Shown in pieces: positions 1-32,508 of a stretch of DNA of 48,203 bases (position 1 is the stretch's first letter; each line of letters starts with the position of its first letter). Made by a program: the position numbers and the translations under genes. Below the pieces are notes generated by a model. The model was not told where the DNA came from. It did not search any database and saw only the letters and a list, made by a program, of their open reading frames with translations. This DNA comes from Kudoa neothunni (lineage: Eukaryota > Animalia > Cnidaria), in NCBI GenBank assembly GCA_964304625.1, contig OZ199840.1, forward strand, positions 273,509 through 321,711, written 5' to 3'.

Positions 1-454
1 ATTTCACCACCAATAGAAAACAAAAGTCTCAACAATATAATCCAGGAAAAACTTAATTAATTCATTTAAAAATATTTTATTTATATTCATAATGCTCAAG
101 TAAATGTTTTTAAATAGTTCGAGAAATAAATATCTTATTATAATCTTTTGTAAACGTTAATTTTGTAATATTTCCTCAAATTACGAACTCCACGTCACCC
201 ACTGTAATAAAAATTATATCTAGAATTAGGTCACAAAGAATTAATTCGAAGTCAATGTAAGACGGACAAAAATCTTTTGAACTCACATAAGTTTATAAAA
301 ATAACCATCGGATACCCTATTTTCTCTCTAAAGTCACATGTAAATTTCAAAAAACAATAAATTTAACCAATGATTTGAAATATCAAATAATGTTACGTGA
401 TCGAAAAATTTCTATCTTAAATACTACCCATAAACTTAGTGAACGAAAGCTAAT

Positions 455-3434
455 TTAATCTCTTTTCTTCTTCAATACCACGATGCCAACTATTGCAATA
501 ACCACAACCACAGCAACACATGCAATAATGATTCTAAAATCAGTTAATTCAAATATCAGCACTTAAAAATGTTTACATAAGTTTTGTTTTATCCCTAAAA
601 AATGTTAAATTAAAGAAATCAGTTTACTAAGCTCACCCTGAACTACTCTTTGCTCCTACGATTATAACATTAAATTACATTGTGAACAAATAATATACCT
701 TGTTGTATGTCAGCACCGCCAAAAATTGTATCATCTTCAACACTGTAAACAGTCAAATAATAGTTATTTCCATCAGGTAAATTATTTATTTTGAATTCTT
801 TACAGGTCACAAAGGCAGTACATCTGTCTACGTTTCTTCTCATGCAAGATTTTACTACCGCATTTGACTTGACACTGCTGTTACGTAACTCCCATTTGCA
901 TTTTGATTTATCGTTCATGGTGGCTGGAAGTGTGGTGGTTACAATGAAACTGTTCCCATCACGTGTAATGACGACTGATATCAATTTTGAGGAGTCAGTT
1001 GGGTTTAATTGTGGTGCAGCTAATACAAGTTTCGTTTAAAAAATTCTTAATAGAGACATTAATTGTAATACTTGATTCTATAATATGCTCTTGTTGTGAA
1101 GATTTTCCGATAGCTGTGACTAAAATTTTGTATGTATTTGCTGCTTCATACTCGGGAAATGTTATGGAACTGCAAAAGGGATTTGAAGAACATGTGTTTG
1201 TGCTGCTAGCGGCCTCAGCAAGCTGTGTATCTAAAGATTTCGCTGCTGGCATTAGACCACCATCTGCTACCATTGGCACAGCAATTCTAGCTATGTTGAG
1301 ATCTGCGGAACTTAAACTGGGAGGAGCAGCTGAAGGGGGTGTTGGTGCTACCGGGGCGGTAACAGGTGTCGTTACTTTCGGCACCACTGGACATGTGTAA
1401 TAATCTATGTAATCGTTACCAGTTTTCTTCTTTACGATATAACTGCATGTTGCAGTTGGATCAACGGAATTTAATCTTGCCTTCAATGACAAACCATCCA
1501 AGGTGATCTTGTGTGTTATCGTTAACGTTGTTAATGCTATTAAAAATTTAAAGAGTAAATTATAACTTCAATAACCTGTTCGTATATCTGTGTAATCTTT
1601 TATACCGTAATCCTTATGTGCAATCACCCTGATGTCATAAGGTTTGTTTGGCTCAAGGTCTTCTATCGTAACTTGTTCACTGCAAATTCCTCTACATGGG
1701 GTGTTGCCATTACATTTCGCGTGGAAAAAGCTGTCCAATCCAGCCGGACTCACCAAATATTCACAGGTAGGTTCATTTTTCTTTTGTGCAGATTCAGTCG
1801 TGGTAGCAACCGTAGCTGTAAGAGAGACTGTTGTATCTGTCTTTGTAGGATCAGTTGTTCCATACTCTTTACCTGTTCCCTTTGCTATATATAATTCGTT
1901 ATTTTATACAATAAATACGTTAGAATTTACTTGTTCTTATGAATATATTTTCAGTGAAACTATTTGGATCACTAACTCCCCCAAATGTGATGTCAAGTAT
2001 GTAAGCTTTTCCTGCTGCAAGTCCTTTAATCACTAATGGTGTACAATCAGTTTTGCATCTATTTTCATTGGATCCTCCCCTTTTACTGCCAGTGTCGCAT
2101 GTTGATTCAGTTGGCGAACCTGATGCGATTGTGTCCGCCAAAAAATGTTTAAGAGTACATGAAGTAATTTGTGGACTAGTAGTTCCTTTAAATGAGGTAC
2201 CACCAAACGTAACACCATCCTTAGTATACGCCGAAAGCAAACCTTCACCTGATTCATTAATGGCTAATGAAAATAATACAAAATGAATATTAATCAAAGG
2301 ATTACCAAATTTAATTTGTTCGTAACCTTTTAAATCACCATCAGTGGCTTCTATATCGTGATGCCTTGTTTTGATTAAAATTTTATAAATATTTTTTTCC
2401 GCAGTGCCATTTAGTTCGACGTACTTACAAGGTGCGTAACAACTCTTGTCGGTTCTGCCACAAACGGACGTATATTTTTCAGTATTTCCTGCACTTTGAC
2501 CATTTTTAAGACTAAACAAGCATATTTCAGATGATAACGAATTAGTGAATCTAATTCCGATTTTGCCTTCAGTTTTGTATACAATATAAAACTGAGGCTT
2601 ATAAATGGCTATGTTTTTCTTCATATATTGGTTGGGCATTATATAAAAGAAACTGGGATATTTTCCGCATCTCACTTCGTAATGAGGTAACAATAAATCA
2701 AAATCAACTTTGTTTGTTGAACTCGCAGTATTACAATTTTCCCCCTTGGAACCATCTGCATATTTAGTATCTTTATAATAAATAGGGCAATCTACAGACG
2801 TGCAAGTTTTTGTTTCAAATTTCAGCTGTTCAGTGTCTGTAGACACGGTAATTTGTGGATTAGCCAACAATGCTAAATTTGGTTTATTTTGATACCAAAT
2901 TAAACAAAATTACGTATTGAATATCCGAATACTTTTGATCCTGCTCCATTAACTTTTTCTTTAATAGTAGCTGTGTCAGTGCCAACGTAGACATATATGT
3001 ATTTGGTTCTTGGTGATAGTTTTTCATAGGTGATTGTATTTAAATTACTACCACAGTCGACAACACATTTATTAGGAGCGTTAGTAGTGTCAGTAGCAGT
3101 GCAACCTTGGATATCTGCAAACGCAGCTGGTATTTCTGAATTAGCTGCAATTTCTGCCTCGTTAGATCGTCTTAAAAGGCACTTATTTCCTTCTTGATAT
3201 TCGGAGCCTCCGAGATTGATTTTAATTTTGTCTGGGTCATTATTTGAACCTTTCACAATCTGATATTTCAGCGTTTTTGTCGGAGCTGTGGGTGCAGGTG
3301 AAGCTGCATCTGGTGGGTTTGAAGTTCCATTAGCAATGGCTTTTCTTGATATTAAAACACCTAAACCTACATTAGCATTCAAAATAACTCAGGAAGATAC
3401 CTAAAACAAGGTAGAGAAATCCAGCTATTTTCAT
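455..3434 (-). CDS. Paralogue A: ~863-aa type I membrane protein with tandem 4-Cys FN3-like modules (10 exons)
   Basis: Hand-spliced exons (minus): 3434-3401, 3360-2914, 2872-2306, 2263-1931, 1884-1576, 1536-1072, 1019-699, 655-637, 594-577, 533-455. All introns are GT-AG, 39-52 nt. Total 2592 nt with an open frame. Signal peptide MKIAGFLYLVLGVLISRKAIA; FN3-like motifs such as ITYEKLSPRTKYIYVYV and VTIEDLEPNKPYDIRVIA; C-terminal LIIIIACVAVVVVIAIVGIVVL-KKKRD*. Joins ORFs 2900-3382, 1920-2870, 1568-1756, 995-1501 and 670-984. Confidence 0.88.
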
Positions 3435-3463
3435 GGTTGACAATTAAATGACCTACTAATTGA

Positions 3464-3494
3464 TGGTTCGGAATACAATTGACCCGAATTTCAC
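3464..3494 (-). promoter_or_regulatory. Conserved upstream motif of paralogue A
   Basis: Reverse complement GTGAAATTCGGGTCAATTGTATTCCGAACCA, ~30-60 nt before the ATG. Also present at 16807-16837 and 29271-29301. Confidence 0.5.
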
Positions 3495-4779
3495 TTATTT
3501 ATGGATATAATGATTCATTCATTGTCAGATGGCAATATTTAGACTAGGCAACAATTATCCAAGTTACTACAAAATTAATCTAAATCAATTTTTTGCAATC
3601 TAACTTAAATCGTTGTGGTATATTAATTATGACTTATAATGGAATTAAAATTTTCTCCATGATAAATTGTTTTTACGGAAATATCGAAGTATAATGTTAA
3701 GTTTTAGCAAAATAATGGTAATATTATTTATTATAGTGAGTATTCAATGGTAATGATGTGCTTACCGTTTACCAAAATTCGACATCATGTCGTGACTTTT
3801 TCCGAAGATATAGTTCATTCACTCTAAAAAGTTTCAGCAGACAAAAATAAATTAATTTTTTTGTTTTTAGTGTTCCTAAATTCGTTATCTTAATCCTCGG
3901 TGTTGGGCATTAATCTCTTTACAATAATATTTTGAGTATTGTTTTCCAGGTTTAACACATGTAAATAAACATTTTTGTCAACGTATTCTATCTAATTACT
4001 AAAAAATAATTTTTTAAACAAGCGGATTCCCTTTATTTGCAGATTTAATCAATTAAAAATGGGTAAGGAGACGGCTATTAAATTTCAACCGCTAAACTTC
4101 ATTTATTTTTGCCGATTCTCTCACGATAATTTTTTTACAATTCTACATGTTGGACAAAATCGTTCAATTCTCAAAAAATTTAGTTATAAAATTTAATAAA
4201 TCATCGGATTAATCTCCCAGTTGTGTTATTTAAGCCTGTATTATATATATTAGGATTTAAATTGTTATTTCCTACTTGTATCATGTATACTTCATAGTAT
4301 GCACTTTTCATTGTCCATAATGAATCAGATATTTTTTACCAAATGATCAGATGGAATAGTTCGCGTTAATAATGGTTAGATTCACAATTCGATGGTGTAA
4401 AACTAAGGTAACTCCCCGAACTGGTACTTTGTTTCGGGTTGGAATTTGTTTTATCATCCCCAAAACATAACAGTGAAGATGATATGTATGATTATTTACA
4501 ACTGGAACATGGATGAAACTATTCTATCCGCCTTTGAAAATACTAATGTAACCACAAGAACACCGGGCTATTGTTAAAAAATTAAGAATATTCGTGCGTT
4601 TAATGTTCATAAGCTTAAGCCTTTTGATGGTAAAAAGCATTTCATTCAAAATGAAAAAATAATCCTTCACGGAAAGCAGAAAAATTATTGGGTCGTTGGC
4701 CGGCACCTTATATGAATTTTTTTGAAAACTATGGCGTGCCAATTATTTATCATTTCATCAAATTATGTATCGCAGTAAC

Positions 4780-7334
4780 TGTAATGAGGGAGTATCCATC
4801 TCCAAAAATTCGGCATCTTCCCGTGCACGCGCATTCCAATTGTGTTATAATTTAATTTAACACATTTTTAAAATATTGAGTGATCACAAATCAGACCAAA
4901 ATTTTTATTCTGAAGAGTTACAAAAAATCTCACGTCGGCAACAATCGGACAGCGCGCAATGTAATGCACATACCTTTTCATAACCTTTTTCAGCCTAATT
5001 TGTCATAAATAATTCATGAAATTTATATTTCTAATTTTTATAATATTATCAAATATGTTCTGTGAATTATTAATGAAATTGGACCGGAAGGATATATGTC
5101 AGTTATTTATTGTGTTTTTTAACCTTAAGTTTTCATTTTTTACATTAACGACTCTTAATTGTTACTTATAAATTTATTATTTAGTTCATATATTTTTTTG
5201 GTGTATTAATATTAAATATATAACGGTATACCGAACAAACCATATTGAAGAAATTGAAAACCTTATGATATTAAAAACAATATAATGAATAATTCGTTAA
5301 CTATTTATAATTAGATTATAAACAAGTCCAAAATAAAATATTTAATGTTGATTTGTACAAATATATCAACTACTTTGAGGAACGATCCGTGATAACTATA
5401 ATTCATAATTAATGTATTGCATAATCGTGTTGATTATCAACACTGAGAAACAATTGTGAGTCAAAAATAAAAAATTTGTTTTTCTTAAAAAATTTCATAA
5501 TCTAATTTCATTTATAAGGAAAAATTATTTTTTCATTAATAAAGCCTTAACGGTAAATCATAAACATATATTTTAATTTATTATCATTAAACGAAAATAC
5601 GCGAGAAACCTCAAATATATTTATTGCAAATATAATTTTAATTTTTAGTTAATACTAATACGGTAAAATCTAAAGTTTTCTTAAGTTTTTTGACAAATAG
5701 CAGTATATAAAAGATGAAAGGAATCAAAACACAAATATTTTGTTTTACTAGCTATTATTTAATTAGTAAATAGTAGCGATCGCTGTTAAAATATATTCGA
5801 AGAAATTCCAATATCATTTATGAACGGAACGCGACCATGATTCATGTAGGTTGGAATCCAGCTGATTTCGTGGTACACCGCTCATTTTCCGAATGAGTTT
5901 TGTTTTGAGATGATGCCACACAACCTCGACCGTATTAGTATGGTAACCCTCTGGAGTGACGTACTCTTTAGAATGATTAACGGTTATATAGTTATAGCCG
6001 TAAATTCGGAGAGAGGTATACCCCAACCACTTGTCAGTATAGATTGTAGTCCCGTTTTCAACTTCCTGTAAGACGAGTTGGGTCAACGTTCGTTTATCCC
6101 TTTTTTGGACAATAAAAAATCTAGATTCTAACAATTTGCGTTTGTCATCATCTACAGAGCATTCGCAAATGCCAACAACCCAAGGGCCGTTTATTCTGTA
6201 ACCATACCATTCATTTCTCCGCTGACTTCTCAAAGGAGTCGCTTCACGGAATAACCTAATCCTTAAGAAATGGTTAGGGCTGGCCAACCATCTGTCCATG
6301 CTTAAAAATCTTCCCCGGTTATTTTTACGGCGACCCCTTAATAAACATTCGTCAATTTCGACGATTCGATTTTCTCCGCCCATTTGCTCGCGTCGTTGGA
6401 ACATTTTATAACAAATACTCCACAACGCTGAATACCAAAATGTAACGGTTTTCTCGGTTATTTGAGTTAATGCCACCACCTTGCATCTTTGCTCTTCAAT
6501 ACACCAAAGTTATATTAACTCAAATAGCTGAGACACTGTTAATTTGGATACATTCGTCCCCATCGCGTTATTGATGCCAAAGAAGGTAGAGGTCCTGGGT
6601 GAAAAATGCGTTCTACAGTCGCTCTTAAAAATAATATTTTAAAAACTATACATAAAATAAAAGTCCTTTGAACATGTATACGAGTATTTCTCAATATCAT
6701 CGTCACAAAGATCGATTGAAGTATTGTTTCTTTTTCTCGTTGTAACTTGGAGGCGTAGAGTGTTATACCTGTGGCAATTCTTGCACCGAGCAGGCGTTTT
6801 TTGTAATAGACCCTTATTCGCTAGGTAAGTAAATAGAGCACTCACGTTAAACAAAAGTTTATAAAATTGACGCTGAAGTGAAAATTCCGCCATCGAAAAA
6901 ACTTTTGTTAATCGGATTAAATTATAAAAACATAAATTTTTAAATTTAATGTGAGATAGCAATATATCAGTTACTATTACATCTATAATTATTGAAAATT
7001 CAAAACACCGCTAAATAAAATATCTCCTATCCTGTGTGATTCTTTAATCGCGAGAACATATTTGATAATATTATAAACATTAGAAATATAAATTTCATGA
7101 ATTATTTATGACAAATTAGGTTGAAAAAGGTTATGAAAAGGTATGAGCATTACATTGCGCGCTGTCCGATTGTTGCCGAAGTGAGATTTTTTGCAACTCT
7201 TTAGAATAAAAATTTTGGTCTGATTTGTGATTACTCAATATTTTAAAAATGTGTTAAATTAAATTATAACACAATTGGAATACGCGTGCAAGGGAAGATG
7301 CCGAATTTTTGGAACTGGATACTCCCTCATTACC
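4780..7334 (-). mobile_element. Merlin (IS1016/ISXO2-like) DNA transposon with ~280-bp terminal inverted repeats
   Basis: 4781-~5061 (GTAATGAGGGAGTATCC...AAATATGTTCT) is the near-perfect reverse complement of ~7053-7333 (...GGATACTCCCTCATTAC). The right terminus reads GG on the minus strand. Encloses an ISXO2-type transposase. No target-site duplication (TSD) recognised. Confidence 0.88.
5814..6893 (-). pseudogene. ISXO2/IS1595-family DDE transposase, disrupted
   Basis: ORF 5814-6479 has VEIDEC, WVVGICE, IYTDKWLGY, TVNHS and HTNTVEVVWHHLK motifs typical of DDE_Tnp_IS1595/Merlin. The upstream ORF 6639-6962 carries a CKNC zinc-ribbon-like piece. Stops and frameshifts lie between them. Confidence 0.85.
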
Positions 7335-8423
7335 GTGTCCTTTATGTTTAAAAGAGGGAAATTTCTGTTTTTAAGGTCCATACTCTACTTAGGACTTTAC
7401 CCATACTAACTATCGTACATTCTTGTAATAGAGCATACTTGTAAAATCAGATTTAATGTCCTCTAAAAAGCTCCTAAATTGCCTATATAAAAGGACTCTC
7501 GATCTTATCACATTAGCGGCACACTTTACAGGGTCCAAAACGTGCTTGAATTTCAATGAAGATTTACACAAGCTTTCTTGATGTTTAATACAATGAAAAG
7601 ACAAAATTTTGTGTGATGGGAAATTTTCATTGATTTTACCATTCATCAGTTTTATTAACCCGGAGTGTTTTCCAACGAGTGAAGGCCCTCCATCAGTAGT
7701 GACACTGGTGAGTTTGTCCAAGTTTAAACCAGAACAGTTCCAACTATTCATAACGCTATCAAAAAAATCTTGTCCAGTTGTTGTGTTCTTCAAGTATTCG
7801 AGTGATAAGCGCTCCTCGGTAGTTTCGAAATTATGGTCAATTCCTTTTACAAAAATGAGTAATTGAGTGGTATCGGCAGCATCTTCACGTTCGTTCAAAC
7901 CAATAGAATTGTACTCAAGGTTGGCAATTTTTTTGAACAAAATTTCTTGTGCATTTTGAGATATATTTTCAATCCGTCGAACAATTGTTCTTCGTGATAG
8001 AGGAATAGCTTCAATTTTTGTGATGACTTGAGGATATAAAACACTCATTAATAAACTCTCCATCCGAGAATGCCTTGTTATGTTTCGCAAAATTGTGGGA
8101 AAATATAAAGCTAGTCGTTACTGCATCACCTTGTATGGATGTTGCTTTTCAAAATGAATTTCGTTGGGGTTTTAAATTTTGTACCATATCAGATGACTTC
8201 TTTTTCAATTCTTCGTGGGACAAGTTGCAGCCAAAATTGGAATGCTTGGTTTGATAATGGCGTTTCAAGTTGTATTTTTTGTACACAGCGATTGTGTCTC
8301 AGCAAATCAAACATACATCCTATTATTGATGCTGGTGAAAAAGTACTTCTCAGTCCACTCATGACTGAAACTTTTACATTCATCTTCAATTCTTATTTTT
8401 GTAGATAGATTGAAACTAGCCAT
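7335..8423 (-). pseudogene. hAT (SPIN/Charlie/Buster, GTF2IRD2-like) transposase fragment, truncated at the Merlin element
   Basis: LSRRTIVRRI, DTTQLLIFVKG, TTDGGPSLVG, FHCIKHQESLC and VR*LSMGKVLSRV motifs. A frameshifted N-terminal zinc-finger-like part lies at 8189-8423. Confidence 0.85.
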
Positions 8424-9087
8424 TTTAACAAACTTTTAAAAACGAAGCTTTCATAATAAGTATAAATGGGGTAACCGATATTTATAATGTCATCTTTCGG
8501 CAGATTTATCACCTTTTTTTGAGAGTAGTTTGTTTTGTTAGTTTACATCACTTAATTATAGTAAAAAAATTTATCTCTGTGTATATAAAATCAGAAATAA
8601 TTCGAATAGAAAAATGCTCATTGATGAGTAGATCCATGAATACCGATTGGACGAAGTCTACATTACGATATAAAAAGTTGGAAGCCAATAATTTACAGTG
8701 ATCTTATTATATCACAATTAATCAGCTCCTTAGGACAAATAAGGAGAGATTTTCTAATTTTTATGACCGATGTTATCTATTAGATATTTGAGGTCATTAT
8801 TAATATATATAGTCCTTTTTTAGAAGACCCCTTTATAGATCAAATGTAAAAGTTAATATTTGGACATTACATTATGATATAAAACGATTTTTAATGAAAT
8901 TATTTCTTATTTTTTTAACTATATTCTCTCTTAGAATGATTGTTTGTAGCAATATTATAATTTTAATACTTCATTCACTTATGCATGACGTTTGTGATGA
9001 ATTATTTTAAACTATTAAATACAATGCACATTTAAGTTCTTTAAACTAAAATAAACATTTTAATTATGAGAATTAGGAACATAATTT

Positions 9088-10832
9088 TAAATTTATTAGA
9101 AACAAAAACAATAGATTAAGTATGATTACAAAATTTTGGTATCCGAAAAGTTTGCTCTTTGGAGATGCGAAGAAATATATCCAAGGGTTAGAAATTACAA
9201 CATAAAACTACGATGAAGCAATTTGTATGTTACACAACCGATACAACAACATTATGGGAATAAAATCAAATCATTATATGCTGATAAACAAGAACAAACC
9301 TGCAGTAAACAATATTAAATCCATTAATCAAACATTTAACGATATAGAAGTTAACGTCAGATCGTTGGAACCATGGGGAAGAAGACCAATTCACTACTAT
9401 TGGTATCCTTGATATTGAGAAAATTACTATACGAAATCACAAGCCAAATACTACTTGTTAACGATGGTAAAAAATTACAATTGAGACCTCAGGGAAGAAA
9501 ACATCGTCCACATTCTCCACCACAACAGAAAACCTGTGCCTATTGTCATGGTGGTCATTGGTCTGATGAATGTACATTGTACTCAACGCTAGATCTAGAA
9601 AAGAGAAACTAAATGATAAGTGTTTTAATTGCTTGAAAAGTGGACATAAAATACAACTTTGCTTGAAGAAAAAACCATGTTATCATTGTAAAAAAATCAA
9701 AGGTACACCATTCAAGCCGTTGTGAAATAAAATATCCGTCTACAGAAAATTCAGCCACATTGCTAAACACCAAGAAAAACACTCGCCCACAAATAGCAAA
9801 AATAACGCTAAGAAATCCTGAAAACCCGCATCTTAACGTTCCTGCCTCTGCTCTGTTTAGTACTGGTAGCGAACGAACGTTCATTACCCTAAGACTAGCG
9901 AAAATTTTAAACCTTAAAGTTTTAAAAAAAGAATCCATCCACCTGAACAAATTTTCTACCACCAAATCGCAAACGATAGAGAGCCAACTAATGGAATTCC
10001 TAATCGATACCAAAAAAGGTGCGAAACGCGTTCACGCTAATTCTACAAAGAAAATTACATATCCGGTATGTGACCAGCAAATTCCCACCGGTGTAATCAA
10101 ACAATTGGATTATAATGTTATACGGATTAATGCGAGCAAGTACCAAATGATTCATATAAATGTTCTCATCGGTATGGACTACTTTTGGGAAATTATGAGA
10201 TGTGTGACGGAGCAATTGGCACCGGGATTATATATACTTGATACTGATGTTGGTAACGTCTTAGTTGGCAGAATAAACCCCTCAGATTTAAAAAAGGAAA
10301 AACGCTCAACCATATTACTCTGTACAAACATTCACAATGAAACATATTCCATGGTATTTAATGAAGATTCTAATGATGATAAAAATGAATAATTTTGGGC
10401 TGTGGAATCGATCGGTATAAAAGACCTAGACGATAACGAACAGTATGACTTGGAAATCCAATTTGAACAGAATATCAAAAAAATGGGAAAAGATACACAG
10501 TATCACTTCATTGGAAAAAGGATAGTAAAATTCAACCAACCAACTTCAATCTATCGAAAGGTAGACTGATCAGTTTGATTAGAAGAATCAAGGGTCACAT
10601 GAAATTGATAAAATAATATGTGAATATTATCCAAACTCAATTAACAAAAGGTATTATTGAAAAGGTTTCAGACGAAAAGGCGTTGCCAAAAAACCCTCAT
10701 TATATCCCACATCACCATGTTTTCTCCAACAGCGACACTACAAAATTACGCATAGTTTTCGACTCTTCTGCCAGAGTCAATAACCCTATTTACAGTTTAA
10801 ACCAATGTCTGTACAAAGTTCTGATTGTCATA
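9088..10832 (+). mobile_element. BEL/Pao LTR retrotransposon remnant (gag, protease, start of RT)
   Basis: Gag motif GDAKKYIQGLEITT*NYDEAICMLHNRY, three Cys/His knuckles (CAYCHGGHWSDEC, CFNCLKSGH, CYHCKK), degenerate aspartyl protease ALFSTGSERTFIT, VLIGMDYFW, and RT start YIPHHHV...TTKLRIVFDSSA. Many stops and frameshifts. Confidence 0.88.
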
Positions 10833-11660
10833 GGGCATTTTTGTAAATCTCGATGTTTTAAAAATGTGCCTACTTTGCCAGTCGCTTACGAACATTCAAA
10901 AAAAGCTTGGATGAATGGAGTCATCTTTAGGAGATATCTGTTAAAATTGAATAGCTTTTTCAGGAATAAAGACAAAAAGTAACTCCTATTTGTCGACAAT
11001 GCAAGTTGCCATATTCATTCCGACCTAAGTAATATCACCATCGAGTATCTACCCAAGAATAGTACAAATGTGTTGCAGCCCTTGATCAAGGGATTATTCG
11101 TTCCTTTAAGGTTTCGAACGTTTCAAAATTGATACAAAGGAATATTGCGTACGTTGAAGCCAAAATGACTCCTAACCCTCCAGACCATCTAGATGCTTTG
11201 ATGATGATAAAAAATGCTTAACATGATGTTAATCAACGGACTGTCATTAACTGTTTTGAAAATGCTGGTTTCATCAAACAAGATACAAATATTTTAAATG
11301 TAGTCAATATCACTCAAGCAAATGAAAGTATAGAGCCTGAATTGTCTTTGGAAATCGACGAAATAATGAATGAGGAAGATCAGGAACAAACTAAAGCTGA
11401 TTTTGAAGATTTCGAACAATATTCTGATAAACCGGATAATAAATAAGATAAGGAGTTCCAACTCGAAGTTGAAGACAGCGTCACTTCAAAACGCGCACTA
11501 GAGTGTATAAATAAATTGGAAACCTATTTTAGAACTAATAGACTTTAACATTATCGACTTCTTGTGAATATTGAAGAAAACGTTGTTGGAAACATAAACA
11601 AAAATTTAGTTCAAACGAAAATAACAAACTTCTTCCCAAAAACATTGGATAAATCGTAGT
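10833..11660 (+). pseudogene. Tigger/pogo (DDE_1) transposase C-terminal fragment
   Basis: SKKAWMNGVIF, LFVDNASCH, YLPKNSTNVLQP-DQGII and NCFENAGF motifs, joined directly to the Pao RT within ORF 10620-10982. Confidence 0.8.
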
Positions 11661-11896
11661 ATAAATTTTTTTATTTTATGTATTTTTTGGAGATAATAAA
11701 TGTGATTTAAATGAGTATTTTCGAAGGTATATTTAATTAGCGAATTTCTCCGTTATTACATATTTCTGCAAGACAACATTTGTCACATTATTAGATGAAA
11801 ATCAATGTGATCATTCAAAAATTATGAAAGTGTTGGGTTTTATATTTTCATGTAATAAAATAGATAATAATACTTGCTGTTGGGATTAGCAAAGCT

Positions 11897-16022: not shown

Positions 16023-16806
16023 CTTTAATGGATGAGTAATATTTAAAAATACTTATTTAATGCCTTTAACGTTTTTATTTTATTTTAATTGAAACAAAAA
16101 AGAAAATCGACGCACTAATTTAGCAATATTGTGAATGTAAAACGTACGAATCGATAAAATTAATGTTTCAAAGTTTACTTGATTACTATGCTTCTAATAT
16201 TTTTGAATTCTTAATTATTTAAATCTATAAATTAAGTTTATTAGCTCTAATTTTTAATCTAGTTGGTTTAATTGATTTGATACTAGAGATTTAAAATATT
16301 GCGACAATAATTACCATTCGTTAGACATTTTCCAGCATCTAATACAGTATTTTAACCGGATATGTATTTATCTCCAATTGTAGTTAATAAAGAATCAATA
16401 AAAAAATTTAAAACTCGACCAATGAACACCTTAATAGCATCTACACAATTAGACTATGATTAAATAAATAAACTATGAATTTTATACTTGATAAAATTGT
16501 AATTCTTAATTATATTCATAAATGTAGTCAACATTGCGATTTTTGTGAATTATACAATAGAAAACGAATGGTTCGTAATCCCATTGTCGGCCCCAAAACT
16601 GATATATACTAAATCCTGCCATGGAAATCAGTTTCCTGTTTCACATTCACATTCGAATACAGATTCATTATTTGCTTATGCTCATATTATTTTCGTTTGA
16701 TCTTTTTACCCGGTTTTCGAAAAAAATTGTTTAATAACTTGAGTAATTAGTACCTAGTCTAAGTTTTGCTATCTGACAATGAATGAATCACTATTTCAAT
16801 AAATGG

Positions 16807-16837
16807 GTGAAATTCGGATCAATTGTATTCCGAACCA
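16807..16837 (+). promoter_or_regulatory. Conserved upstream motif of paralogue B
   Basis: GTGAAATTCGGATCAATTGTATTCCGAACCA, an imperfect dyad TTCGGA...CAATTG...TCCGAA, shared with A and C. Confidence 0.5.
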
Positions 16838-16866
16838 ACAATTGGTTGGCCATTTAATTGTCAACT

Positions 16867-19851
16867 ATGAAAATATCTGGATTTCTCTACCTTGTTCTAG
16901 GTATTTTCTGGGTTAATATAATATCAATGTAAGTTTAGGTGTTATAATATCAAGCATAACCAATGCTAATTCAAGTCCTCAAGCTACACCTGCAGCTCCA
17001 AGGAAGACGCTAAAATACCAGATTGTGAAAACTTCAGATGGTAACACAAACGTAATTAAACTCAATCTTGGAGGCTCTGATTACGGTGCCACCCAAAAGT
17101 GTCGTATAATGCGATCCAACGAGGCGGAAATTGCAGATGCTACTGGTGCTACACCAACAGCTGACTTTAAAGACATCAACAGCTGCACTGCTAATGACCC
17201 AAATACAGCTGCTAGTACTAAATGCGTGGTCGGTTGTAATACCGATGTTAACACTATTGAATACGATAAGCTGTCACCAAGAACCAAATACATTTACGTC
17301 TACGTAGGTGCTACCGTACAGGCTGTTACAGGGGAAGATAAAAAAATTGGGGGGAAAGTATTCGGATATTCAATACGTAATTTTATTTAATTTGATATCA
17401 AAATAAACCAAATTTAGCATTGTTGGCTAATCCACAAATTACCGTGTCTACAGACACTGAACAGCTGAAATTTGAAACAAAAACTTGCATATCCGTAGAT
17501 TGCCCTATTTATTATAAAGATACTAAATATGCAGATGGTTCCAAGGGAGAGAATTGTAATACTGCGAGTTCAGAAAACAAAGTTGATTTCGATTTATTGT
17601 TACCTCATTACGAAGTAAGATGCGGAAAATATCCCAGTTTCTTTTATAATATGCCCAATCAATATATGAAAAAAAGCATAGAAATTTATGAGCCTCAGTT
17701 TTATGTTGTTAAAAAAACTGAAAACAAAATGGGAATTAAGTTTACCAATTCCCCATCGTCTGAAATATGCCTATTCAGTATTAAAGATGGACAGGATTCA
17801 GCAAGTGGCGAATCATATACGTCTGCTTGTGGTGGTACTAATAAAATGTGTTATGCTCCTTGTAAGTATGTCGAAATCAATGGAAATGCGGAGAAAAAGT
17901 TTTTTAAAATTTTAATCCAAACAAGGCATCACGACATAAAAACTACTGGTAGTAATTTGGATGGTTACAAACAAACCAAATTTGGTAATCCTTTTAGTAA
18001 CACACATTTGTATTATTTTCTTCAGCATTTACTGAATCGGATGATGGATTGCTTTCTTTTTATACCAGTACCGGTGTTAAGTTTGATGGAAGCTCATTAA
18101 AAACAACAAGTTCGCCAATAATGACTACGTGCACTCTTCAGCGTTATTTTGCTGATAAACCGAAGCCAACCACATTAAACGATGCAAAATGTGACGCTAC
18201 TAGTACAGAGAATGACAAATGCAAAAATGATTGCACAAAATTGACAATTCAAGAACTTACAGAGGGGAAAGCGCATTTGTTTGTAATCACATTTACAACC
18301 TCCAATACTATCCCAACAGGTTTCAAGGAAAAGATATTCCTAAGAACAAGTAAATCATTATATTTATTTTAAAAAATAATTAATTATAAAGAAATCGGAA
18401 GTAGCAAAGCCTATGGGACTACTGATCCTACAAAGACAGATACAACACTCTCTCTTACAGCTATAGCTGCCATCACAACTGACCCTGAACAAAAGAAACA
18501 AGAACCTACCTGTGAGTATTTAATAAGTCCGACTGGATTAGATAGCTTTTTCCACGCGAAATGCAATGGCAACACCCCATGTAGAGGAATTTGCAGTGAA
18601 CAAGTTACGATAGAAGACCTCGAGCCAAACACTCCTTACGACATCAGAGTGATCGCACATAAGGATTACGGCATAAAAGATTACACAGATATACGAACGG
18701 GTTATTGTAGTTTTAATTTACTCTTTAAATTTTTAATAGCGTTAACAACGTTAACCATAACACACAAGATCACATTGGATGGTTTGTCATTGAGGGCACG
18801 ATTAAATTCCGTGGATCCAACTGCAACATGCAGTTATGTCGTACAAAAGAAGACTGGTGACGATTACACAGACTATTACACATGTCCTGTGGTATCGAAA
18901 GTAACGACACCTGTTACCGCCCCAGTGGTACCACCACCCGCTTCAGCTCCTACTTCCAGTTTAAGTTCCGCAGATCTCAACATAGCTAGAATTGCTGTGC
19001 CAATTGTAGCAGATGGTGGTCCAATGCCTGCAGCGAAATCTTCTGTTCCGGACACTTCAGATACACAGCTTTCTGAGGCCGCTAACAGCGCAAACACATG
19101 TTCTTCAAATCCCCTTTGCAGTTCCATAACATTTCCCGAGTATGAAGCAGCAAATACATACAAAATTTTAGTCACAGCTATTGGAAAATCTTCACAAAAA
19201 GAGCATATTATAGAATCAAGTACTACAATTAATTCTTCAATTAATGTCTCTATTAAGAATTGTTTAAACGAAACTTATATTAGGTGCACCACAATTAAAC
19301 CCAACTGACTCCTCAAAATTGATATCAGTCGTCATTACACGTGATGGGAACAGTTTCATTGTAACCACCACAGTTCCATCCAGTATGAACGATAAATCAA
19401 AATGCAAATGGGAGTTACGTAACAGCAGTGTCAAGTCAAATGCGGTAGTAAAATCTTGCATGGGAAGAAGCGTAGACAGATGTGCTGCCTTTGTGACCTG
19501 TAAAGAATTCAAAATAAATAATTTACCTGATGGAAATAATTATTATTTGACTGTTTACAGTGTTGAAGATGCTACAATTTTTGGCGGTGCTGACATACAA
19601 CAAGGTATATCATTTGTTCACAATGCGATTTAATGTTATATATATTATAGGAGCAAAGAGTAGTTCAGGGTGAGCTTAGTAAAATGATTTTTTTAATTTA
19701 ACACTTTTTAGGGATAAAACCAAACTTATGTAAACATTTTTAAATGTTAACATTTGAATTAACTGATTTTAGAATCATTATTGCATGCGTTGCTGTGGTT
19801 GTGGTTATTGCAATAGTTGGCATCGTGGTATTGAAGAAGAAAAGGGATTAA
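16867..19851 (+). CDS. Paralogue B: ~862-aa type I membrane protein with tandem 4-Cys FN3-like modules (10 exons)
   Basis: Exons 16867-16900, 16939-17376, 17418-17984, 18026-18349, 18392-18700, 18740-19219, 19284-19604, 19651-19669, 19712-19729, 19773-19851. Introns are GT-AG of 38, 41, 41, 42, 39, 64, 46, 42 and 43 nt. 2589 nt with an open frame. Signal peptide MKISGFLYLVLGVIISSITNA; TM helix plus KKKRD*. Confidence 0.9.
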
Positions 19852-20927
19852 ATTAATTTTTGTTAACTATAGTTTATAGATAATATTTATGATAGAAATT
19901 TTTCGATCACGTAACATTATTTTATATTTTGAATCATTATTTGAATTTATTTTTTTTTGAAATTTGCATGAGGCTTTTGAGAGAAAATAGGATATCCAAT
20001 GTTTATTTTTATATAATTATGTGAGTTCAATAGATTTTTCTCCATTATATATTAAATTTGAATTTGTTTTTTGTGACTTTAACTGTAGTTATAGTTTTTA
20101 TTAATTTGAAATCTGATCAAATTATGTTAATTGATTTCCAGGTTAAAATATTAATCTCTTGAGCTTGATTTTATTGGATAAAAATTATTAGAAAAAAATA
20201 AAATAATACAATCATGTAATCAAAATAAAATGGGTCTTTTTACGTAAAATTGCCTACGTTAATAAAATTAATGAATCTTCAAATAATCGCGATGAATTAA
20301 TTTACTAGCTTTTATGTTTTTAGCGATATTTTTACAATATTAAATGAAATTTTATAGAATTCTATAGTGAAAAATTTTGTTTTTATCTAGAAATTATGAA
20401 TCTTTAAACATTTATTTATATTCAAAAAAGATAATTGAGTGTTCACATTTTCAAACTTGTAACTGGTAATTGACTAATTAAAAATTTTCAATTTTTTATA
20501 TAATAATATATTTTATTTAAAATGTTCAAAATATATTTTGGTGTAATTTTACACACAATATGAAAATATTTATTGTTTATATAATGATAAGCTGGATATT
20601 ATTTCGTTAAATGTACGAATGAAATTAATATTATGTACGTTGTACCGAAACAAAAAAAACCACGAAAATTAAATATAAACTTTGTTAATTATATTTTTAT
20701 TAGATCGTACCCTCTTAATAAATGATTAAAAATTATATTCTACTAGCCGTAATACCTGGCTGAGCTCGGGGTGTTGAGAATATCTAATGTAGGAAAAAAA
20801 TTTTCATAAAAAAGTTTTAAATTATTTTTTAATATACTAAACATTTCAATATGTTAGTTGCATAACATCTGCCGAAAATTTATTTCGCAAAATAAACAGT
20901 CATAATCGAAACATAACAAAATTTTAC

Positions 20928-28000: not shown

Positions 28001-29270
28001 ATTAATGAATCAACAAACAACTAATTTTATTTTGAATTTATTCGGTTTTAAGATAGCCTAACTAAAAAAATAAGTGTTGTGTTCGTACACATTAGATAAA
28101 ATAAAGAATTATACAATATATGGCTTATTTATGCTAACTTAAATGTATTAAGAAAATGCGAGTTGGACTAAAATTATAATTTAAAAGAAATATATCCAGA
28201 CTCAAACTAGGTTATTATTTGAAAGTTCTCTATCGATTAGTGAGCGAAAACTTAAATGTTGAAGCATGCATATCGTAATTCCCTGGTACCGCTGACGCCC
28301 GAGCGCATGCTATTAGAAAATTGTTTAAAATAAACTTTTGTTAAATTTGTATTTGTGACCATATTAAAAATCATTATAAGTTGAGTCGTGTTTAAGCAGC
28401 TGGGAACTTTGGTTGGGCTCAACGAGCCGAATTTATGGGATTGGATACTTCTCCATTACCCAAGTTTCGTCTCAAAATGACATTATGATTTGAAATTATT
28501 GTAATTTTTAATTATAAATTTTAGATATTGATTCCGGATAAAATTTAGAATAATGATTGTCATTATTTTATGGTATTAATTTGATATTTTCTTTTTTAAA
28601 TGGTATTTTCTGGAATTTTATGCGTTTCGTCGATAGAAATATTTTAAGTTACATTTTAGTAGGCCCTGCTAGATGAATATTATTTAGTTACATCATAATT
28701 TTTTAATTATATCGTTAATAATACTCCCATTTAATATCAGAAAACGTAACAACGTGGTTATGGTCACACTTTTCTTGAAATGAAAGATATTTGACAATAG
28801 TGAAATGATAAGACGTCCGTTTCTAGTACGTTTTTTACATATTCAATATTTATTTGAATTAGATTTGTGGTCATTGCATAAAAATAACCATCATACAAGA
28901 ATTTATCCACTCCTATCTTCGTCCTTATAATGATATAACATTGTTGGGTTTTTATCTCCCATTAGAAAAGCAAAATGTCATTTTAAAATAAAAAGTAATC
29001 ACAATCTTAATATGAAATATAACAAGCCAAATACCCCAAAACCGCTTTACGAATTTGATGAGTCATGGCTACGCCCTGAATTTTTGTTGGGGTGTATCCG
29101 TAATAGACGGCGAAATTTCGTTATGCCAAAGTTCTAATTAATTTACCACATTGACATAAGCTAGATGGTAAAAAATTGGTTGAGATTAATTTTTTTATTA
29201 ATTTGAATAATTATTATCTGGTCTGAGTTTTGCTATTTGGCATTGAATGAATCGCTATATCAATAATTGA

Positions 29271-29301
29271 GTGAAATTCGGGTCAATTGTATTCCGAACC
29301 A
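29271..29301 (+). promoter_or_regulatory. Conserved upstream motif of paralogue C
   Basis: GTGAAATTCGGGTCAATTGTATTCCGAACCA, identical to A. Confidence 0.5.
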
Positions 29302-29330
29302 TCAATTGGTACTTCATTTAATTATCAACC

Positions 29331-32300
29331 ATGAAAATATCTGGATTTCTCTATTTTTTTTTAGGTAGCTCCTTGAGTTAATTTTAATGCTAATATAAGT
29401 TCAGGTGTTTTAATATCAACCACAGCCAATACTAATGAACGTCCAAATCCTCAAGCTGCACCTGTAGCCCCAACAAAAACGTTGGCATATGAAATTGAGA
29501 AAGGTGCGACTAGTAGCGCAGACCAAATTAAAATCAAACTTGGAGGCACTGAATATGGAACTGGCAAAAAATGCCTTATACGTCGATCTAACGAAGCAGA
29601 AATCGCGGCGACTACCTCTGGTCAGGTACCAGCAGCTGAGTTTAGAGACATCGACACTTGTGTTGCTAAAGTTAGTGATTCTGGTGTTAGTGATAAATGT
29701 GTTGTCGAATGTAATACTGACGCGAATAAAATCACCTACGATAAACTCTCACCAAGGACCAAATACATATATGTCTACGTAGGCACTGTTGCAACTGACA
29801 TTAAAGAGAAAACTAACGGACCAGGAGCAAAAGTATTCGGATATTCAATACGTAAATCAATTTAATTTAACATAAAAATAAATTGAATTTAGCATTGTTG
29901 GCTAATCCACAAATTAGCGTGTCTACGGTTACAAGCGATACCGACAAAAATAGGCTGAAATTCGCAGCAAAAACATGTGCACCTGTAGATTGTCCTATTT
30001 ATTATAAAGACATAAAATATGATGATGGTACCGCAGGGACCACTTGTGTTGAAGAAAATACCAAAAATACAGTTGATTATGATTTACTGTTACCGCATTA
30101 CGAAGTGAGGTGCGGAAATTATCCCAGTTTCTTTTACAATATGCCCAATCAATATATGAAGAAAACCATAGATATTTATAAGCCTCAGTTTTATATTGTA
30201 GAAAAAAATGAAGGAAAAATCGGAATTAAATTCACTAATTCTCCATCGTCTGAAATCTGTCTTTTCAGTCTTAAAAATGGTCAAAGTGCAGGAAATAATG
30301 AAAAATATACGTCCGTTTGTGGCGGAACTGACAAGAGTTGTTATGCTCCATGTAAGTACGTCGAACTCAATGGCATTGCGGGGAAAAAGATTTATAAAAT
30401 TTTAATCAAAACAAGACATCACGACATAGAAGCTACTAGTGGTGATTTCAAGGGTTACGAACAAACTAAATTTGGTAATCCTTAAATCAATATGCAGTTT
30501 GTATTATTTTTATTAGCTGTTACTGAACAAACTGGAGGACTCCTGTCAGTTTACACGGATCAGGGAGTGTCATTTGATAGTACCTTATTTAAAAGAGAGT
30601 CTGAACCAATAATCGATAAATGTACTCTAAAACACTACTCTGCAGACAAAATCAAACCAGACACCTTAACTACAACAACGTGTGATGGGACCAGCTCCAG
30701 TAGTTCCAATTGCAAAACTGATTGCTCAACGAAATTGGTGATTCAAACACTTACACCGGGGAAAGCGTACATGATTGAGATCGCGTTTGAAGCGAGTAAT
30801 TCTGCAAAGGATTTTAATGAACATATATTCATAAGAACAGGTAAATCATCATACTTATATTAAAAAATAATGAATTATAAAGCAAACGGAAATGGGAAAA
30901 CGTATGGAACTACTGATCCTACAAAAACAGATACAACACTCTCTCTTACAGCTATTGGTGGGAATTCCCCATCAGACAAGACAACTGAACCTACCTGTGA
31001 GTATTTAATAAGTCCGACTGGATTAGATAGCTTTTTCCACGCGAAATGCAATGGTAACGCCCCGTGCAGAGGAATTTGCAGCGAACAAGTTACGATAGAA
31101 GACCTTGAGCCAAACACACCTTATGACATCAGGGTGATCGCACATAAGGATTACGGCATAAAAGATTACACAGATATACGAACAGGTTATTGAAGTTATA
31201 ATTTATTCTGTAAATTTTTAATAGCATTAACAACATTAACGATAACACATAAAATCACCTTGGATGGTTTGTCATTGAAGGCACGATTAAATTCCGTGGA
31301 TCCAACTGCAATTTGTAGTTATGTGGTACAAAAGAAGACTGGTAACGATTACACAGATTATTACACATGTCCAGAGGTGCCGAAAGTAACGACACCTCTC
31401 ACCGCCCCAGTAGCACCAGCACCAGTACCCCCTTCAGCTGCTCCTCCCAGTTTAAGTTCAGCAGGTCTCAACATAGCTAGAATTGCTGTGCCAATTGTAG
31501 CAGATGGTGGCCCAATACTAGCAGCGAAATCTTCAGTTCCGGTCACTTCAGATACACAGCTTGCTGATGTCGCGAACAGCGCAAACACATGTTCTTCAAA
31601 CCCCTTTTGCAGTTCCATAACATTTCCCGAGTATGAAGCAGCAAATACATACAAAATATTAGTCACAGCTATCGGAAAATCTTCACAACAAGAGCATATC
31701 ATAGAATCAAGTATTACAATTAATGCTTCAATTAATGTCTCTATTAAGAATTGTTTAAACCAAACTTATATTAGGTGCACCACAATTAAACCCAACTGAC
31801 TCCTCAAAATTGATATCAGTCGTCATTACACGTGATGGGAACAGTTTCATTGTAACCACCACACTTCCAGCCACTATGAACGATAAATCAAAATGCAAAT
31901 GGGAGTTACGTAACAGCAGCGTCAAGTCAAATGCGGTAGTAAAATCTTGCATGGGAAGAAGCGTAGACAGATGTGCTGCCTTTGTGACCTGTAAAGAATT
32001 CAAAATAAATAATTTACCTGATGGAAATAATTATTATTTGACTGTTTACAGTGTTGAAGATGCTACAATTTTTGGCGGTGCTGACATACAACAAGGTATA
32101 TCATTTGTTCACAATGCGATTTAATGTTATATATATTATAGGAGCAAAGAGTAGTTCAGGGTGAGCTTAGTAAAAATGATTTTTTTTAATTTAACACTTT
32201 TTAGGGATAAAACCAAACTTATGTAAACATTTTTAAATGTTAACATTTGAATTAAACTGATTTTAGAATCATTATTGCATGCGTTGCTGTGGTTGTGGTT

Positions 32301-32351
32301 ATTGCAATAGTTGGCAATCGTGGTATTGAAGAAGAAAAGGGATTAAATTAA
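29331..32351 (+). CDS. Paralogue C: type I membrane protein with tandem 4-Cys FN3-like modules (10 exons); 1-nt insertion in the last exon changes the tail
   Basis: Exons 29331-29364, 29405-29851, 29893-30474, 30517-30840, 30883-31185, 31225-31710, 31775-32095, 32142-32160, 32205-32222, 32267-32351. All introns are GT-AG. An extra A at 32316-32317 (GGCAATCG vs GGCATCG) gives ...IAIVG-NRGIEEEKGLN*. Confidence 0.87.
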
Positions 32352-32508
32352 TTTTTGTTAACTATAGTTTATAGGTAATATTTATGATAGAAATTTTTCG
32401 ATCACGTAACATTATTTTATATTTTGAATCATTAGTTGAATTTATTTTTTTTTGAAATTTGCATGAGGCTTTTGAGAGGAAATATGATCTCCGATGTTTT
32501 TTTAATTA

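What the first reader, a model, noticed from the sequence alone, without database searches (positions are those of the whole stretch)
2306..2940. Paralogue A is a chimera: B-like then C-like within one exon, switching at conserved anchor sequences
Seen: the end of exon 2 in A resembles C (IKEKVNGAGSK vs IKEKTNGPGAK; B has VTGEDKKIGGK). From AAAGTATTCGGATATTCAATACGTAA, which is identical in all three copies, through intron 2 (2 differences A/B, many A/C) and the first half of exon 3, A is nearly identical to B. After MPNQYMKK, A matches C (FSLKNGQSAGNxEKYTSVCGxTDKSC; B has FSIKDGQDSASGESYTSACGGTNKMC). Downstream, intron 4, intron 6 and exon 7 mostly group B with C, except TTLPAT (A=C). Inference: segmental gene conversion or recombination swaps whole modules, using conserved inter-domain sequence as crossover sites.
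Basis: partly seen in the sequence, partly recalled or inferred. Interest (0 to 1): 0.82.

Follow-up and report, generated by a model that had tools for sequence, protein, structure and literature searches.

The report
Mosaic surface-protein gene in Kudoa
One gene of a large, undescribed family of surface-protein genes in the tuna parasite Kudoa neothunni really is a patchwork copied from sister genes (gene conversion), a familiar way for parasites to diversify exposed proteins, though the idea that whole modules are swapped at fixed conserved "anchor" sites holds only weakly.

Summary
Gene A (window 455-3434, minus strand) carries a 293-bp stretch (2643-2935: conserved exon-2 end, intron 2, first half of exon 3) that is 96% identical to paralogue B, against 84% for the next best copy in the genome. 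The stretch after it is not specifically C-like. Its closest relative is a fourth copy, D, 108 kb away: 96.6% over 525 bp (2118-2642), against 89% for C. That tract runs through intron 3 and ends inside hypervariable exon 4, so it is not a whole-module swap.

Segment trees conflict strongly (AU p about 1e-4). Introns and synonymous sites switch partner together with the protein sequence, which excludes convergence.

All about 37 copies examined are fine-scale mosaics, with about 30 donor switches per gene. Switches are only 1.2-2.1 times enriched in conserved blocks.

The genome matches the published Kudoa neothunni assembly. The proteins are single-pass membrane proteins built from seven 4-cysteine FN3-like modules, with no Pfam family and no literature.

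Read-level confirmation was inconclusive.

The scan has already found and followed up the same phenomenon at other loci of this genome (s1-687414, s1-682521).

Verdict: ordinary mechanism, undescribed family, moderate interest.

The parts
455..3434 (-). Gene A: 9 exons, intact reading frame. E1 3434-3401, E2 3366-2914, E3 2872-2306, E4 2263-1931, E5 1884-1576, E6 1536-1072, E7 1019-699, E8 646-628, E9 about 533-455. It has a signal peptide, seven 4-Cys FN3-like modules, one transmembrane helix and a KKKRD tail.
   Evidence: Open frames and GT..AG borders. Exons E2-E7 are all multiples of 3 and phase 1-1. Same exon layout in B and C.
2910..2935 (-). 26-nt conserved 'anchor': the last 22 nt of exon 2 (encoding KVFGYSI) plus the GTAA splice donor. 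It holds the 5' junction of the A-B tract.
   Evidence: Identical in A, B and C. 15 exact copies and 33 copies within 2 mismatches genome-wide, 0 in the control. The last C-type site is 2936 and the first B-type site is 2909.
2643..2935 (-). A-B shared tract, 293 bp at 96.2% identity: exon-2 end, intron 2 (2873-2913) and the first FN3-like module of exon 3.
   Evidence: Copying-model painting. Genome-wide, B is 96% and the next best copy 84%. A+B clade has SH-aLRT 99.8; A+C and A+D are rejected at p about 1e-4.
2632..2642 (-). B-to-D switch interval, inside the conserved mid-exon-3 block (about 2602-2661, encoding YPSFFYxMPNQYMKK at the border between the two modules). It contains two substitutions unique to A (2641, 2640).
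   Evidence: Site patterns. Block identity 0.93. The block is also conserved in 40%-identical homologues from other data sets.
2118..2642 (-). A-D shared tract, 525 bp at 96.6% identity: second module of exon 3, intron 3 (2264-2305) and the first 48 codons of hypervariable exon 4. The partner D is G000 C3:384873-388143 (locus L033), 108 kb away in inverted orientation.
   Evidence: A+D clade SH-aLRT 100; A+B and A+C rejected. Intron 3 differs at 1 of 42 positions between A and D, against 8 for A/B. Exon 4 first part: 1 synonymous and 0 nonsynonymous differences.
16801..19906 (+). Paralogue B (locus L009). The counterpart of the A-B tract is at 17355-17647.
29270..32401 (+). Paralogue C (locus L011). 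It is 89-91% identical to A over 2306-2633 and belongs to the same sequence type as D, L004, L006 and L012 there, but it is not the nearest copy.
19235..19980 (+). B-C near-identical 3' tract (exon 7 to 3' flank, about 98.4%, including 254 identical bases). The counterpart in C is about 31727-32475.

Best explanation
Gene A is a genuine mosaic produced by interlocus (ectopic), non-crossover gene conversion among members of a family of at least 33-40 copies. The family encodes single-pass surface proteins made of FN3-like modules, in the myxozoan fish parasite Kudoa neothunni.

In the flagged region two tracts abut. A 293-bp tract is shared with B, which lies 13 kb away in inverted orientation. 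A 525-bp tract is shared with D, which lies 108 kb away, also inverted. Each tract is flanked by sequence of different ancestry. Each therefore looks like a short patch copied during homology-directed repair, not the product of a crossover.

Shown here:
- the mosaic pattern and its statistical support;
- its extension to introns and silent sites;
- its generality across the family;
- that the recent tracts found all join copies within the cluster near one end of contig C3.

Inferred:
- the repair mechanism;
- that the process serves to diversify the membrane-distal modules.

The direction of transfer is unknown.

The conserved blocks are conserved because the protein needs them; they persist in 40%-identical homologues. 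They give only a mild preference for tract ends. They are not dedicated crossover sites.
For: Sliding identity and triplet site runs, with permutation p < 5e-5 and 5e-5.

Genome-wide nearest copies per tract: B 96% against 84% for the next copy; D 95% against 89% for C.

Painting with 37 copies gives B over 2935-2643, then D over 2642-2118.

Maximum-likelihood trees per segment: the A+B clade (SH-aLRT 99.8) and the A+D clade (100) each reject the other's grouping, with AU p of about 1e-4.

Introns and synonymous sites follow the same switches. Intron 2 differs at 2 of 41 positions for A/B and 14 for A/D. Intron 3 differs at 1 of 42 for A/D and 8 for A/B. pS for A/B is 0.12 in the first part of exon 3 and 0.48 in the second.

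Family-wide evidence:
- about 30 donor segments per gene;
- distance matrices of adjacent 60-bp windows correlate only about 0.2;
- a PHI-like test gives p <= 0.001, and the share of site pairs failing the four-gamete test (a sign of recombination) rises from 0.32 to 0.41 within 50 bp;
- other recent tracts of 120-520 bp at 98-100% identity all join copies within C3:186-460 kb.

A and B, and A and D, are in inverted orientation, so a single crossover would invert the DNA between them rather than leave a patch.
Against: No single read or contig was shown to span both junctions together with unique flanks. The Logan contigs of the source sample break exactly at the shared anchors. The 'variant letters' they show turned out to be the B and D paralogue paths.

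The assembly comes from low-coverage HiFi data (k-mer coverage about 7; PMC12239612). Some family copies carry obvious consensus errors.

The tracts are 3.4-3.8% diverged, so the events are not very recent, or a closer donor is missing from the assembly.

Only one genome is available, so the polarity and non-reciprocity of transfer cannot be tested.
Confidence: 0.85

Rival explanations
1. Assembly or consensus artefact. The low-coverage hifiasm-meta assembly mixed reads from paralogous loci, so A's mosaic does not exist on any one DNA molecule.
For: Coverage of the parasite was low (PMC12239612). Copies D, L023, L013, L017 and L041 carry many private +1 homopolymer insertions typical of poor consensus. 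Read laying could not bridge the junctions.
Against: The patches are 300-500 bp long and sit inside a 3-kb gene whose flanks are unique. HiFi reads span whole genes. A differs from B at about 13 sites and from D at about 18 sites inside the tracts, so neither tract is a copy of the other locus's reads. A itself has no private insertions and an intact frame. The same mosaicism is seen in about 37 copies on three chromosomes.
Confidence: 0.04
2. Relict ancestry rather than transfer into A. A-B and A-D similarity are what remains of older duplications. The other segments were overwritten or diverged, or the mosaics arose by reciprocal crossovers during expansion of the gene array.
For: Polarity cannot be determined from one genome. 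A+D is not rejected in exon 2 (p-AU 0.32) and is weakly favoured downstream (SH-aLRT 86), so A and D may share some deeper kinship.
Against: A cannot be sister to both B and D by simple duplication; segments S1 and S2 reject each other's clade. This reading still needs conversion to overwrite the remaining segments, so it differs in bookkeeping, not in mechanism. The inverted orientation of the partners argues against simple unequal crossover.
Confidence: 0.09
3. Convergent or parallel selection made the same protein segments alike without any DNA exchange.
For: The modules are under structural constraint. dN/dS is 0.25-0.66.
Against: Introns 2 and 3 and synonymous sites show the same partner switches as replacement sites.
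Confidence: 0.01

Closest known systems
Pneumocystis jirovecii msg (major surface glycoprotein) families
   Same: Large families of surface-protein genes clustered near chromosome ends. The genes are mosaics of fragments shared with other members. Short conserved sequences (the 33-bp CRJE, conserved recombination junction element) have been proposed as recombination sites (PMC10622565, PMC5676039).
   Different: Those are fungal genes without this exon-per-module structure. They have one expression site fed through the CRJE. Here no expression site is known, and the conserved blocks are only weakly enriched for breakpoints. The protein fold is different.
Segmental gene conversion in variant-antigen families of protozoan and bacterial pathogens (Trypanosoma brucei VSG mosaics, Plasmodium falciparum var, Anaplasma msp2, Borrelia vlsE).
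   Same: Short tracts are copied between diverged paralogues, giving patchwork genes. The membrane-distal part is variable and the membrane-proximal part conserved. Many copies lie near chromosome ends.
   Different: In those systems conversion into an expressed copy during infection and mutually exclusive expression have been demonstrated. Here only germline-level mosaicism in one assembly is shown. The host organism is an animal (a cnidarian), and the genes have introns that take part in the tracts.
Hydractinia allorecognition (Alr) gene family, another cnidarian system
   Same: A cnidarian cluster of single-pass membrane proteins with tandem beta-sandwich ectodomains, a hypervariable distal domain, and chimeric alleles attributed to recombination (PMC3342096; bioRxiv 10.1101/2022.03.25.485889).
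   Different: Alr proteins have Ig-like domains and signalling tails. These have 4-Cys FN3-like modules and a 5-residue tail. No sequence relationship was detected or tested. The function there is self/non-self recognition in a colonial free-living animal.
Candidate variant surface families reported in the myxozoan Sphaerospora molnari (VSP-like, RIFIN/STEVOR-like)
   Same: Expanded membrane-protein families in a myxozoan, proposed to underlie antigenic variation whose mechanism is unknown (bioRxiv 10.64898/2026.02.11.705288).
   Different: They are different protein types (CXXC-rich VSP-like, RIFIN-like). That paper does not mention gene conversion (0 occurrences).

Membership tests
Interlocus gene-conversion mosaic | Adjacent segments of one gene have significantly different nearest relatives (phylogenetic incongruence). 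| tested here: met
   A+B SH-aLRT 99.8 in 2935-2643 and A+D 100 in 2642-2118. The alternative clades are rejected with AU p of about 1e-4. Permutation p < 5e-5 and 5e-5. The segments were chosen after seeing the data.
Interlocus gene-conversion mosaic | Similarity extends to silent sites and introns, so it is not convergence. | tested here: met
   Intron 2 A/B 2 of 41 against 11-14 for the others. Intron 3 A/D 1 of 42 against 6-8. pS follows the same switches.
Interlocus gene-conversion mosaic | Short patch bounded on both sides by sequence of other ancestry, with the partner locus intact elsewhere. | tested here: met
   Tracts of 293 bp and 525 bp. The partners lie 13 kb and 108 kb away in inverted orientation.
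Interlocus gene-conversion mosaic | Non-reciprocity and polarity (donor unchanged, recipient changed). | not testable with these tools
   This needs other isolates or an outgroup locus. Only one genome is available.
Interlocus gene-conversion mosaic | The mosaic is present on single sequenced molecules. | tested here: inconclusive
   The Logan contigs of the source sample break at the anchors. The raw-read run X9 held no parasite reads.
Fibronectin type III (FN3) domain proteins | Pfam fn3 (PF00041) match above the gathering score. | tested here: not met
   Best match is exon 5: 23.8 bits against a cut-off of 25, E 5e-5. The other exons have no match.
Fibronectin type III (FN3) domain proteins | Seven-strand beta-sandwich fold superposable on solved FN3 domains. 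| tested here: inconclusive
   The exon-5 model (pLDDT 86.9) hits FN3 domains and monobodies with probability 1.0 and TM 0.5-0.62, but E is about 1e-3. The exon-3 model is weak (pLDDT 63) and gives only weak hits to tandem FN3/Ig receptors. This is fold-level likeness, not proven family membership.
Variant surface antigen system (var/VSG/msg type) | Large family of secreted or membrane proteins with a variable distal part and a conserved proximal part. | tested here: met
   At least 33-40 copies. Exons 2 and 4 are 43-59% identical between window copies at the protein level, and exon 7 is 93-96%. The signal peptide and transmembrane helix were read from the translation.
Variant surface antigen system (var/VSG/msg type) | Clustering near chromosome ends. 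| tested here: inconclusive
   14 of the 29 closest copies lie in C3:186-460 kb of an 11.05-Mb contig. Others lie near the ends of C1 and C2, but many are internal.
Variant surface antigen system (var/VSG/msg type) | Mutually exclusive or switching expression during infection, with exposure to host immunity. | not testable with these tools
   No RNA run holds the gene. The genome paper reports that very few transcriptome reads map to the parasite.
Dedicated recombination junction element (CRJE-like) | Breakpoints concentrated at a short conserved element. | tested here: inconclusive
   Enrichment in conserved blocks is 1.2-2.1 times, p 0.02-0.13 depending on stringency. More than 85% of switches lie elsewhere. 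The A-D tract ends in variable sequence.

The most novel reading that the evidence does not exclude
This FN3-like family could be the variant-antigen repertoire of a myxozoan. Ongoing, possibly mitotic, segmental gene conversion within the cluster near one end of C3 would continually create new membrane-distal module combinations that let Kudoa persist in fish muscle. That would give the first molecular mechanism for antigenic variation in a parasitic animal of the phylum Cnidaria.
Probability: 0.15. Interest if true: 0.85.

Novelty: new member of a known kind. Interest (0 to 1): 0.45.

Why it matters
Myxozoans are economically important fish parasites. Antigenic variation has been reported in some of them, but the mechanism is unknown (bioRxiv 10.64898/2026.02.11.705288).

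A large family of single-pass proteins with a signal peptide, found only as 19 distant unnamed hits among 1.84 billion representative proteins, and shuffled by gene conversion, is a concrete candidate for that role. It is also a candidate for host-cell adhesion or recognition between parasites.

It would also be a clear animal example of intron-containing genes diversified by short-tract ectopic conversion.

For this particular finding the gain is modest. The mechanism is textbook, the same phenomenon has already been followed up twice elsewhere in this genome, and no expression or population data exist yet.

Tried and rejected
1. Pfam on each exon of A found no family. Only a sub-threshold fn3 hit appeared on exon 5.

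2. A profile of exon 3 searched against PDB sequences found nothing.

3. Foldseek with the exon-3 model (pLDDT 63) gave no significant match.

4. Read laying. The raw-read run X9 (host-labelled) had 0 reads on the stretch. The Logan contigs of the source sample are short and end at the shared anchors. I first read a 518-nt contig with 6 differences as a second allele of A. I rejected this because the variant letters are exactly D's alleles and differ between runs of the same sample. That pattern fits the contig builder choosing between paralogue paths.

5. I rejected the reading 'D is a pseudogene donor'. Its roughly 20 frame breaks are nearly all +1 homopolymer insertions, with no in-frame stop. 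Such insertions are confined to a few copies, which points to consensus errors.

6. Blanket positive selection was not found: dN/dS is 0.25-0.66 per exon.

7. 'Whole-module exchange at anchors' as a rule was rejected.

8. One look-up of encoding contigs failed because the machine did not answer. The other gave an unnamed 2.2-kb contig with no organism information.

All protein work was done exon by exon, by reference.
Full report
**What is in the window.**

A self-comparison finds three copies of a 3.1-kb unit:
- A at 401-3500 on the minus strand.
- B at 16801-19906 on the plus strand.
- C at 29270-32401 on the plus strand.

They are about 83% identical overall. Between A and B lie transposon remains: a piggyBac-type transposase, an IS1595-like transposase and a BEL/Pao-type peptidase.

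Gene A has nine exons with very short introns of 34-52 nt and an intact frame. Exons 2-7 are all phase 1-1 and multiples of three. Each encodes one or two modules with four cysteines. The product reads as a signal peptide, seven modules, a proline-rich spacer, one transmembrane helix and a five-residue tail. B and C have the same layout.

All protein searches and folds were done exon by exon, by reference.

**Whose genome.**

The assembly has 40,260,978 bases in four contigs: 17.15, 12.04 and 11.05 Mb, plus 18,219 bp.

An earlier follow-up note of this scan (s1-687414) named Kudoa neothunni. I checked that against the paper that published the assembly (PMC12239612). The paper reports 40.2 Mb, N50 12.0 Mb, three chromosomes, an 18,219-bp mitochondrial contig, 30.4% GC and 49-bp introns. 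The assembly was built from low-coverage HiFi reads of an infected yellowfin tuna. The match is exact where it can be exact.

That paper does not mention surface proteins, paralogues or this family (0 occurrences).

**Checking the observation.**

In a three-way alignment, identity to B jumps to 93-98% over A 2920-2640 while identity to C stays near 70%. From 2640 to 2380 A is 86-90% identical to C and 70-80% to B.

Counting sites where two copies agree against the third gives:
- 25 C-type against 8 B-type sites in 2941-3060.
- 54 B-type against 9 C-type sites in 2645-2940.
- 37 C-type against 7 B-type sites in 2380-2644.

Such runs were reached in none (B-run) or 1 (C-run) of 20,000 permutations of site order. 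The last C-type site before the B run is 2936 and the first B-type site is 2909. The first switch therefore lies inside the anchor.

**What the wider genome adds.**

The family has at least 33-40 copies. Fourteen of the 29 closest lie in C3:186-460 kb, the region that contains the window.

Searching the genome with each half separately gives two different answers.

For 2634-2935, B is 96% identical and the next best copy is 84%. B is a specific partner.

For 2306-2633, the best match is not C (89%). It is a copy at C3:385.7 kb, here called D, at 95%. C merely belongs to the same sequence type, along with several other copies.

With D and seven further copies added, a copying-model painting of A gives B for 2935-2643 (293 bp, 96.2%). 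This is followed directly by D for 2642-2118 (525 bp, 96.6%).

The D tract runs through the rest of exon 3, all of intron 3 and the first 48 codons of exon 4. It stops in one of the most variable parts of the gene, where family identity is 0.62.

**Statistical and evolutionary tests.**

Maximum-likelihood trees of the two tracts place A with B (SH-aLRT 99.8) and A with D (100) respectively. In each tract the other grouping, and A with C, is rejected by the AU test at p of about 1e-4. In exon 2, A+B (p 9e-5) and A+C (p 0.002) are both rejected. The segments were defined after seeing the data, but the likelihood differences of 50-190 log units are far beyond what that choice could create.

Silent sites tell the same story:
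- Intron 2 differs at 2 of 41 positions between A and B, against 14 for D and 11 for C.
- Intron 3 differs at 1 of 42 positions between A and D, against 8 for B and 6 for C.
- Synonymous divergence between A and B is 0.12 in the first half of exon 3 and 0.48 in the second.
- Synonymous divergence between A and D is 0.09 and 0.03 inside its tract.

Convergent selection is therefore excluded.

A and its two partners are in inverted orientation, 13 and 108 kb apart. Short patches bounded on both sides fit non-crossover gene conversion, not unequal crossing-over.

**The whole family is mosaic.**

Each of the 29 closest copies is painted from about 30 donor segments on average. Pairwise-distance matrices of adjacent, non-overlapping 60-bp windows correlate only about 0.2. 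The share of site pairs that fail the four-gamete test (a sign of recombination) rises from 0.32 at under 10 bp to 0.41 at 25-50 bp. A PHI-like statistic lies more than ten standard deviations below its permutation mean.

Ten other recent tracts in the variable half are 120-520 bp long and 98-100% identical. All of them join copies within the C3 cluster, and their ends do not coincide with exon borders.

**Are conserved anchors the crossover sites?**

The mid-exon block sits at the border between the two modules in the predicted structure. It is conserved even in 40%-identical homologues from other data sets, so it is conserved for protein reasons.

I spread each inferred switch over its uncertainty interval and compared the result with a uniform expectation. 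Conserved blocks are then enriched only 1.2-2.1 times (p 0.02-0.13), and most switches lie elsewhere. The third boundary of A's own mosaic (2118) is in variable sequence.

The anchor idea survives only as a mild homology preference, which any homology-dependent repair would show.

**What the proteins are.**

No Pfam family matches. Exon 5 just misses fn3, at 23.8 against 25 bits.

A model of the exon-5 module (pLDDT 86.9) superposes on FN3 domains with TM 0.5-0.62. The exon-3 model is weaker (pLDDT 63.4) but all-beta, with weak hits to tandem FN3/Ig receptor pairs.

A profile of exon 3 finds only 19 proteins among 1.84 billion representatives. The 13 best are short and those looked up are unnamed; the five weakest are 135-1,166 residues long, two of them named bacterial proteins. 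Two of the best hits are about 40% identical to A's exon 3.

Variation is concentrated in particular loops and in exons 2 and 4, which are 43-59% identical at the protein level between the window's copies. Exon 7 is 93-96% identical. dN/dS per exon is 0.25-0.66, highest in exons 2 and 4.

**Could it be an artefact?**

Read laying was not decisive. The host-labelled raw-read run held no parasite reads. The Logan contigs from the source sample end exactly at the shared anchors, as k-mer contigs must.

Variant letters that looked like a second allele are B's alleles within 2673-2905 and D's alleles within 2148-2412. They also differ between runs of the same sample, so they reflect paralogue paths.

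Against an artefact:
- The patches lie within a gene that single HiFi reads span.
- A differs from both partners inside the tracts.
- A has no private indels in exons and an intact frame.

I put an artefact at about 4%.

The assembly does have weak spots. D and a few other copies carry many +1 homopolymer insertions without stop codons. I read these as consensus errors rather than pseudogenisation.

**Comparison with known systems and novelty.**

The process is the one known from Pneumocystis msg genes (PMC10622565, PMC5676039). From general knowledge it is also the one known from VSG, var, msp2 and vlsE. The nearest cnidarian parallel is the Hydractinia Alr family, with its chimeric alleles (PMC3342096).

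None of the defining functional features of an antigenic-variation system could be tested. These are switching expression and exposure to host immunity.

Literature searches found no description of this family or of gene conversion in Myxozoa. A recent preprint states that the mechanism of myxozoan antigenic variation is unknown.

The finding is therefore a new member of a known kind. The scan had already reached the same conclusion at two other loci of this genome (s1-687414, s1-682521).

Noticed in passing
L033 (G000 C3:384873-388143); also L023, L013, L017, L041: A few family copies carry many private 1-bp insertions: 17 in D and 11 in L023. Nearly all extend a homopolymer, and there are no in-frame stops. 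Most copies have none. This looks like stretches of poor consensus in the low-coverage assembly rather than pseudogenes, so apparent frameshifts in this genome should not be taken at face value.
   Followed up: partly
window 3441-3500 and equivalents upstream of B and C: The 60-100 bp upstream of the start codon is 0.85-0.91 identical across the family, more conserved than exon 2. Homology between copies ends about 100 bp beyond each end of the gene. The repeated unit is therefore the gene plus a short shared putative promoter, not a larger segmental duplication.
   Followed up: partly
window introns 1-4 of gene A (3367-3400, 2873-2913, 2264-2305, 1885-1930): In the variable half of the gene the introns are less diverged between paralogues (JC distance 0.19-0.28) than synonymous sites of the neighbouring exons (dS 0.46-0.68). 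Possible causes are constraint on ultra-short introns, AT-rich composition, or more frequent homogenisation. This is unexplained.
   Followed up: no
window 5814-13736: The 13 kb between A and B is filled with transposon remains. There is an apparently intact piggyBac-type transposase ORF (12048-13736; Pfam DDE_Tnp_1_7, E 3e-71), an IS1595-like transposase fragment (5814-6479) and a BEL/Pao-type peptidase fragment (9760-10392).
   Followed up: partly
window 19235-19980 and 31727-32475: B and C are 98-100% identical from exon 7 through the 3' flank, while they are 60-75% identical in exons 2-4. This is a separate homogenising tract at the membrane-proximal end.
   Followed up: partly
G000 C3:1359876-1475088 and C3:3514531 (L037-L041): A second, more distant subfamily is about 69% identical to A at the DNA level. 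It has the same exon-3 layout and conserved cysteines, and it is clustered about 1.1-1.2 Mb beyond the window on C3.
   Followed up: no
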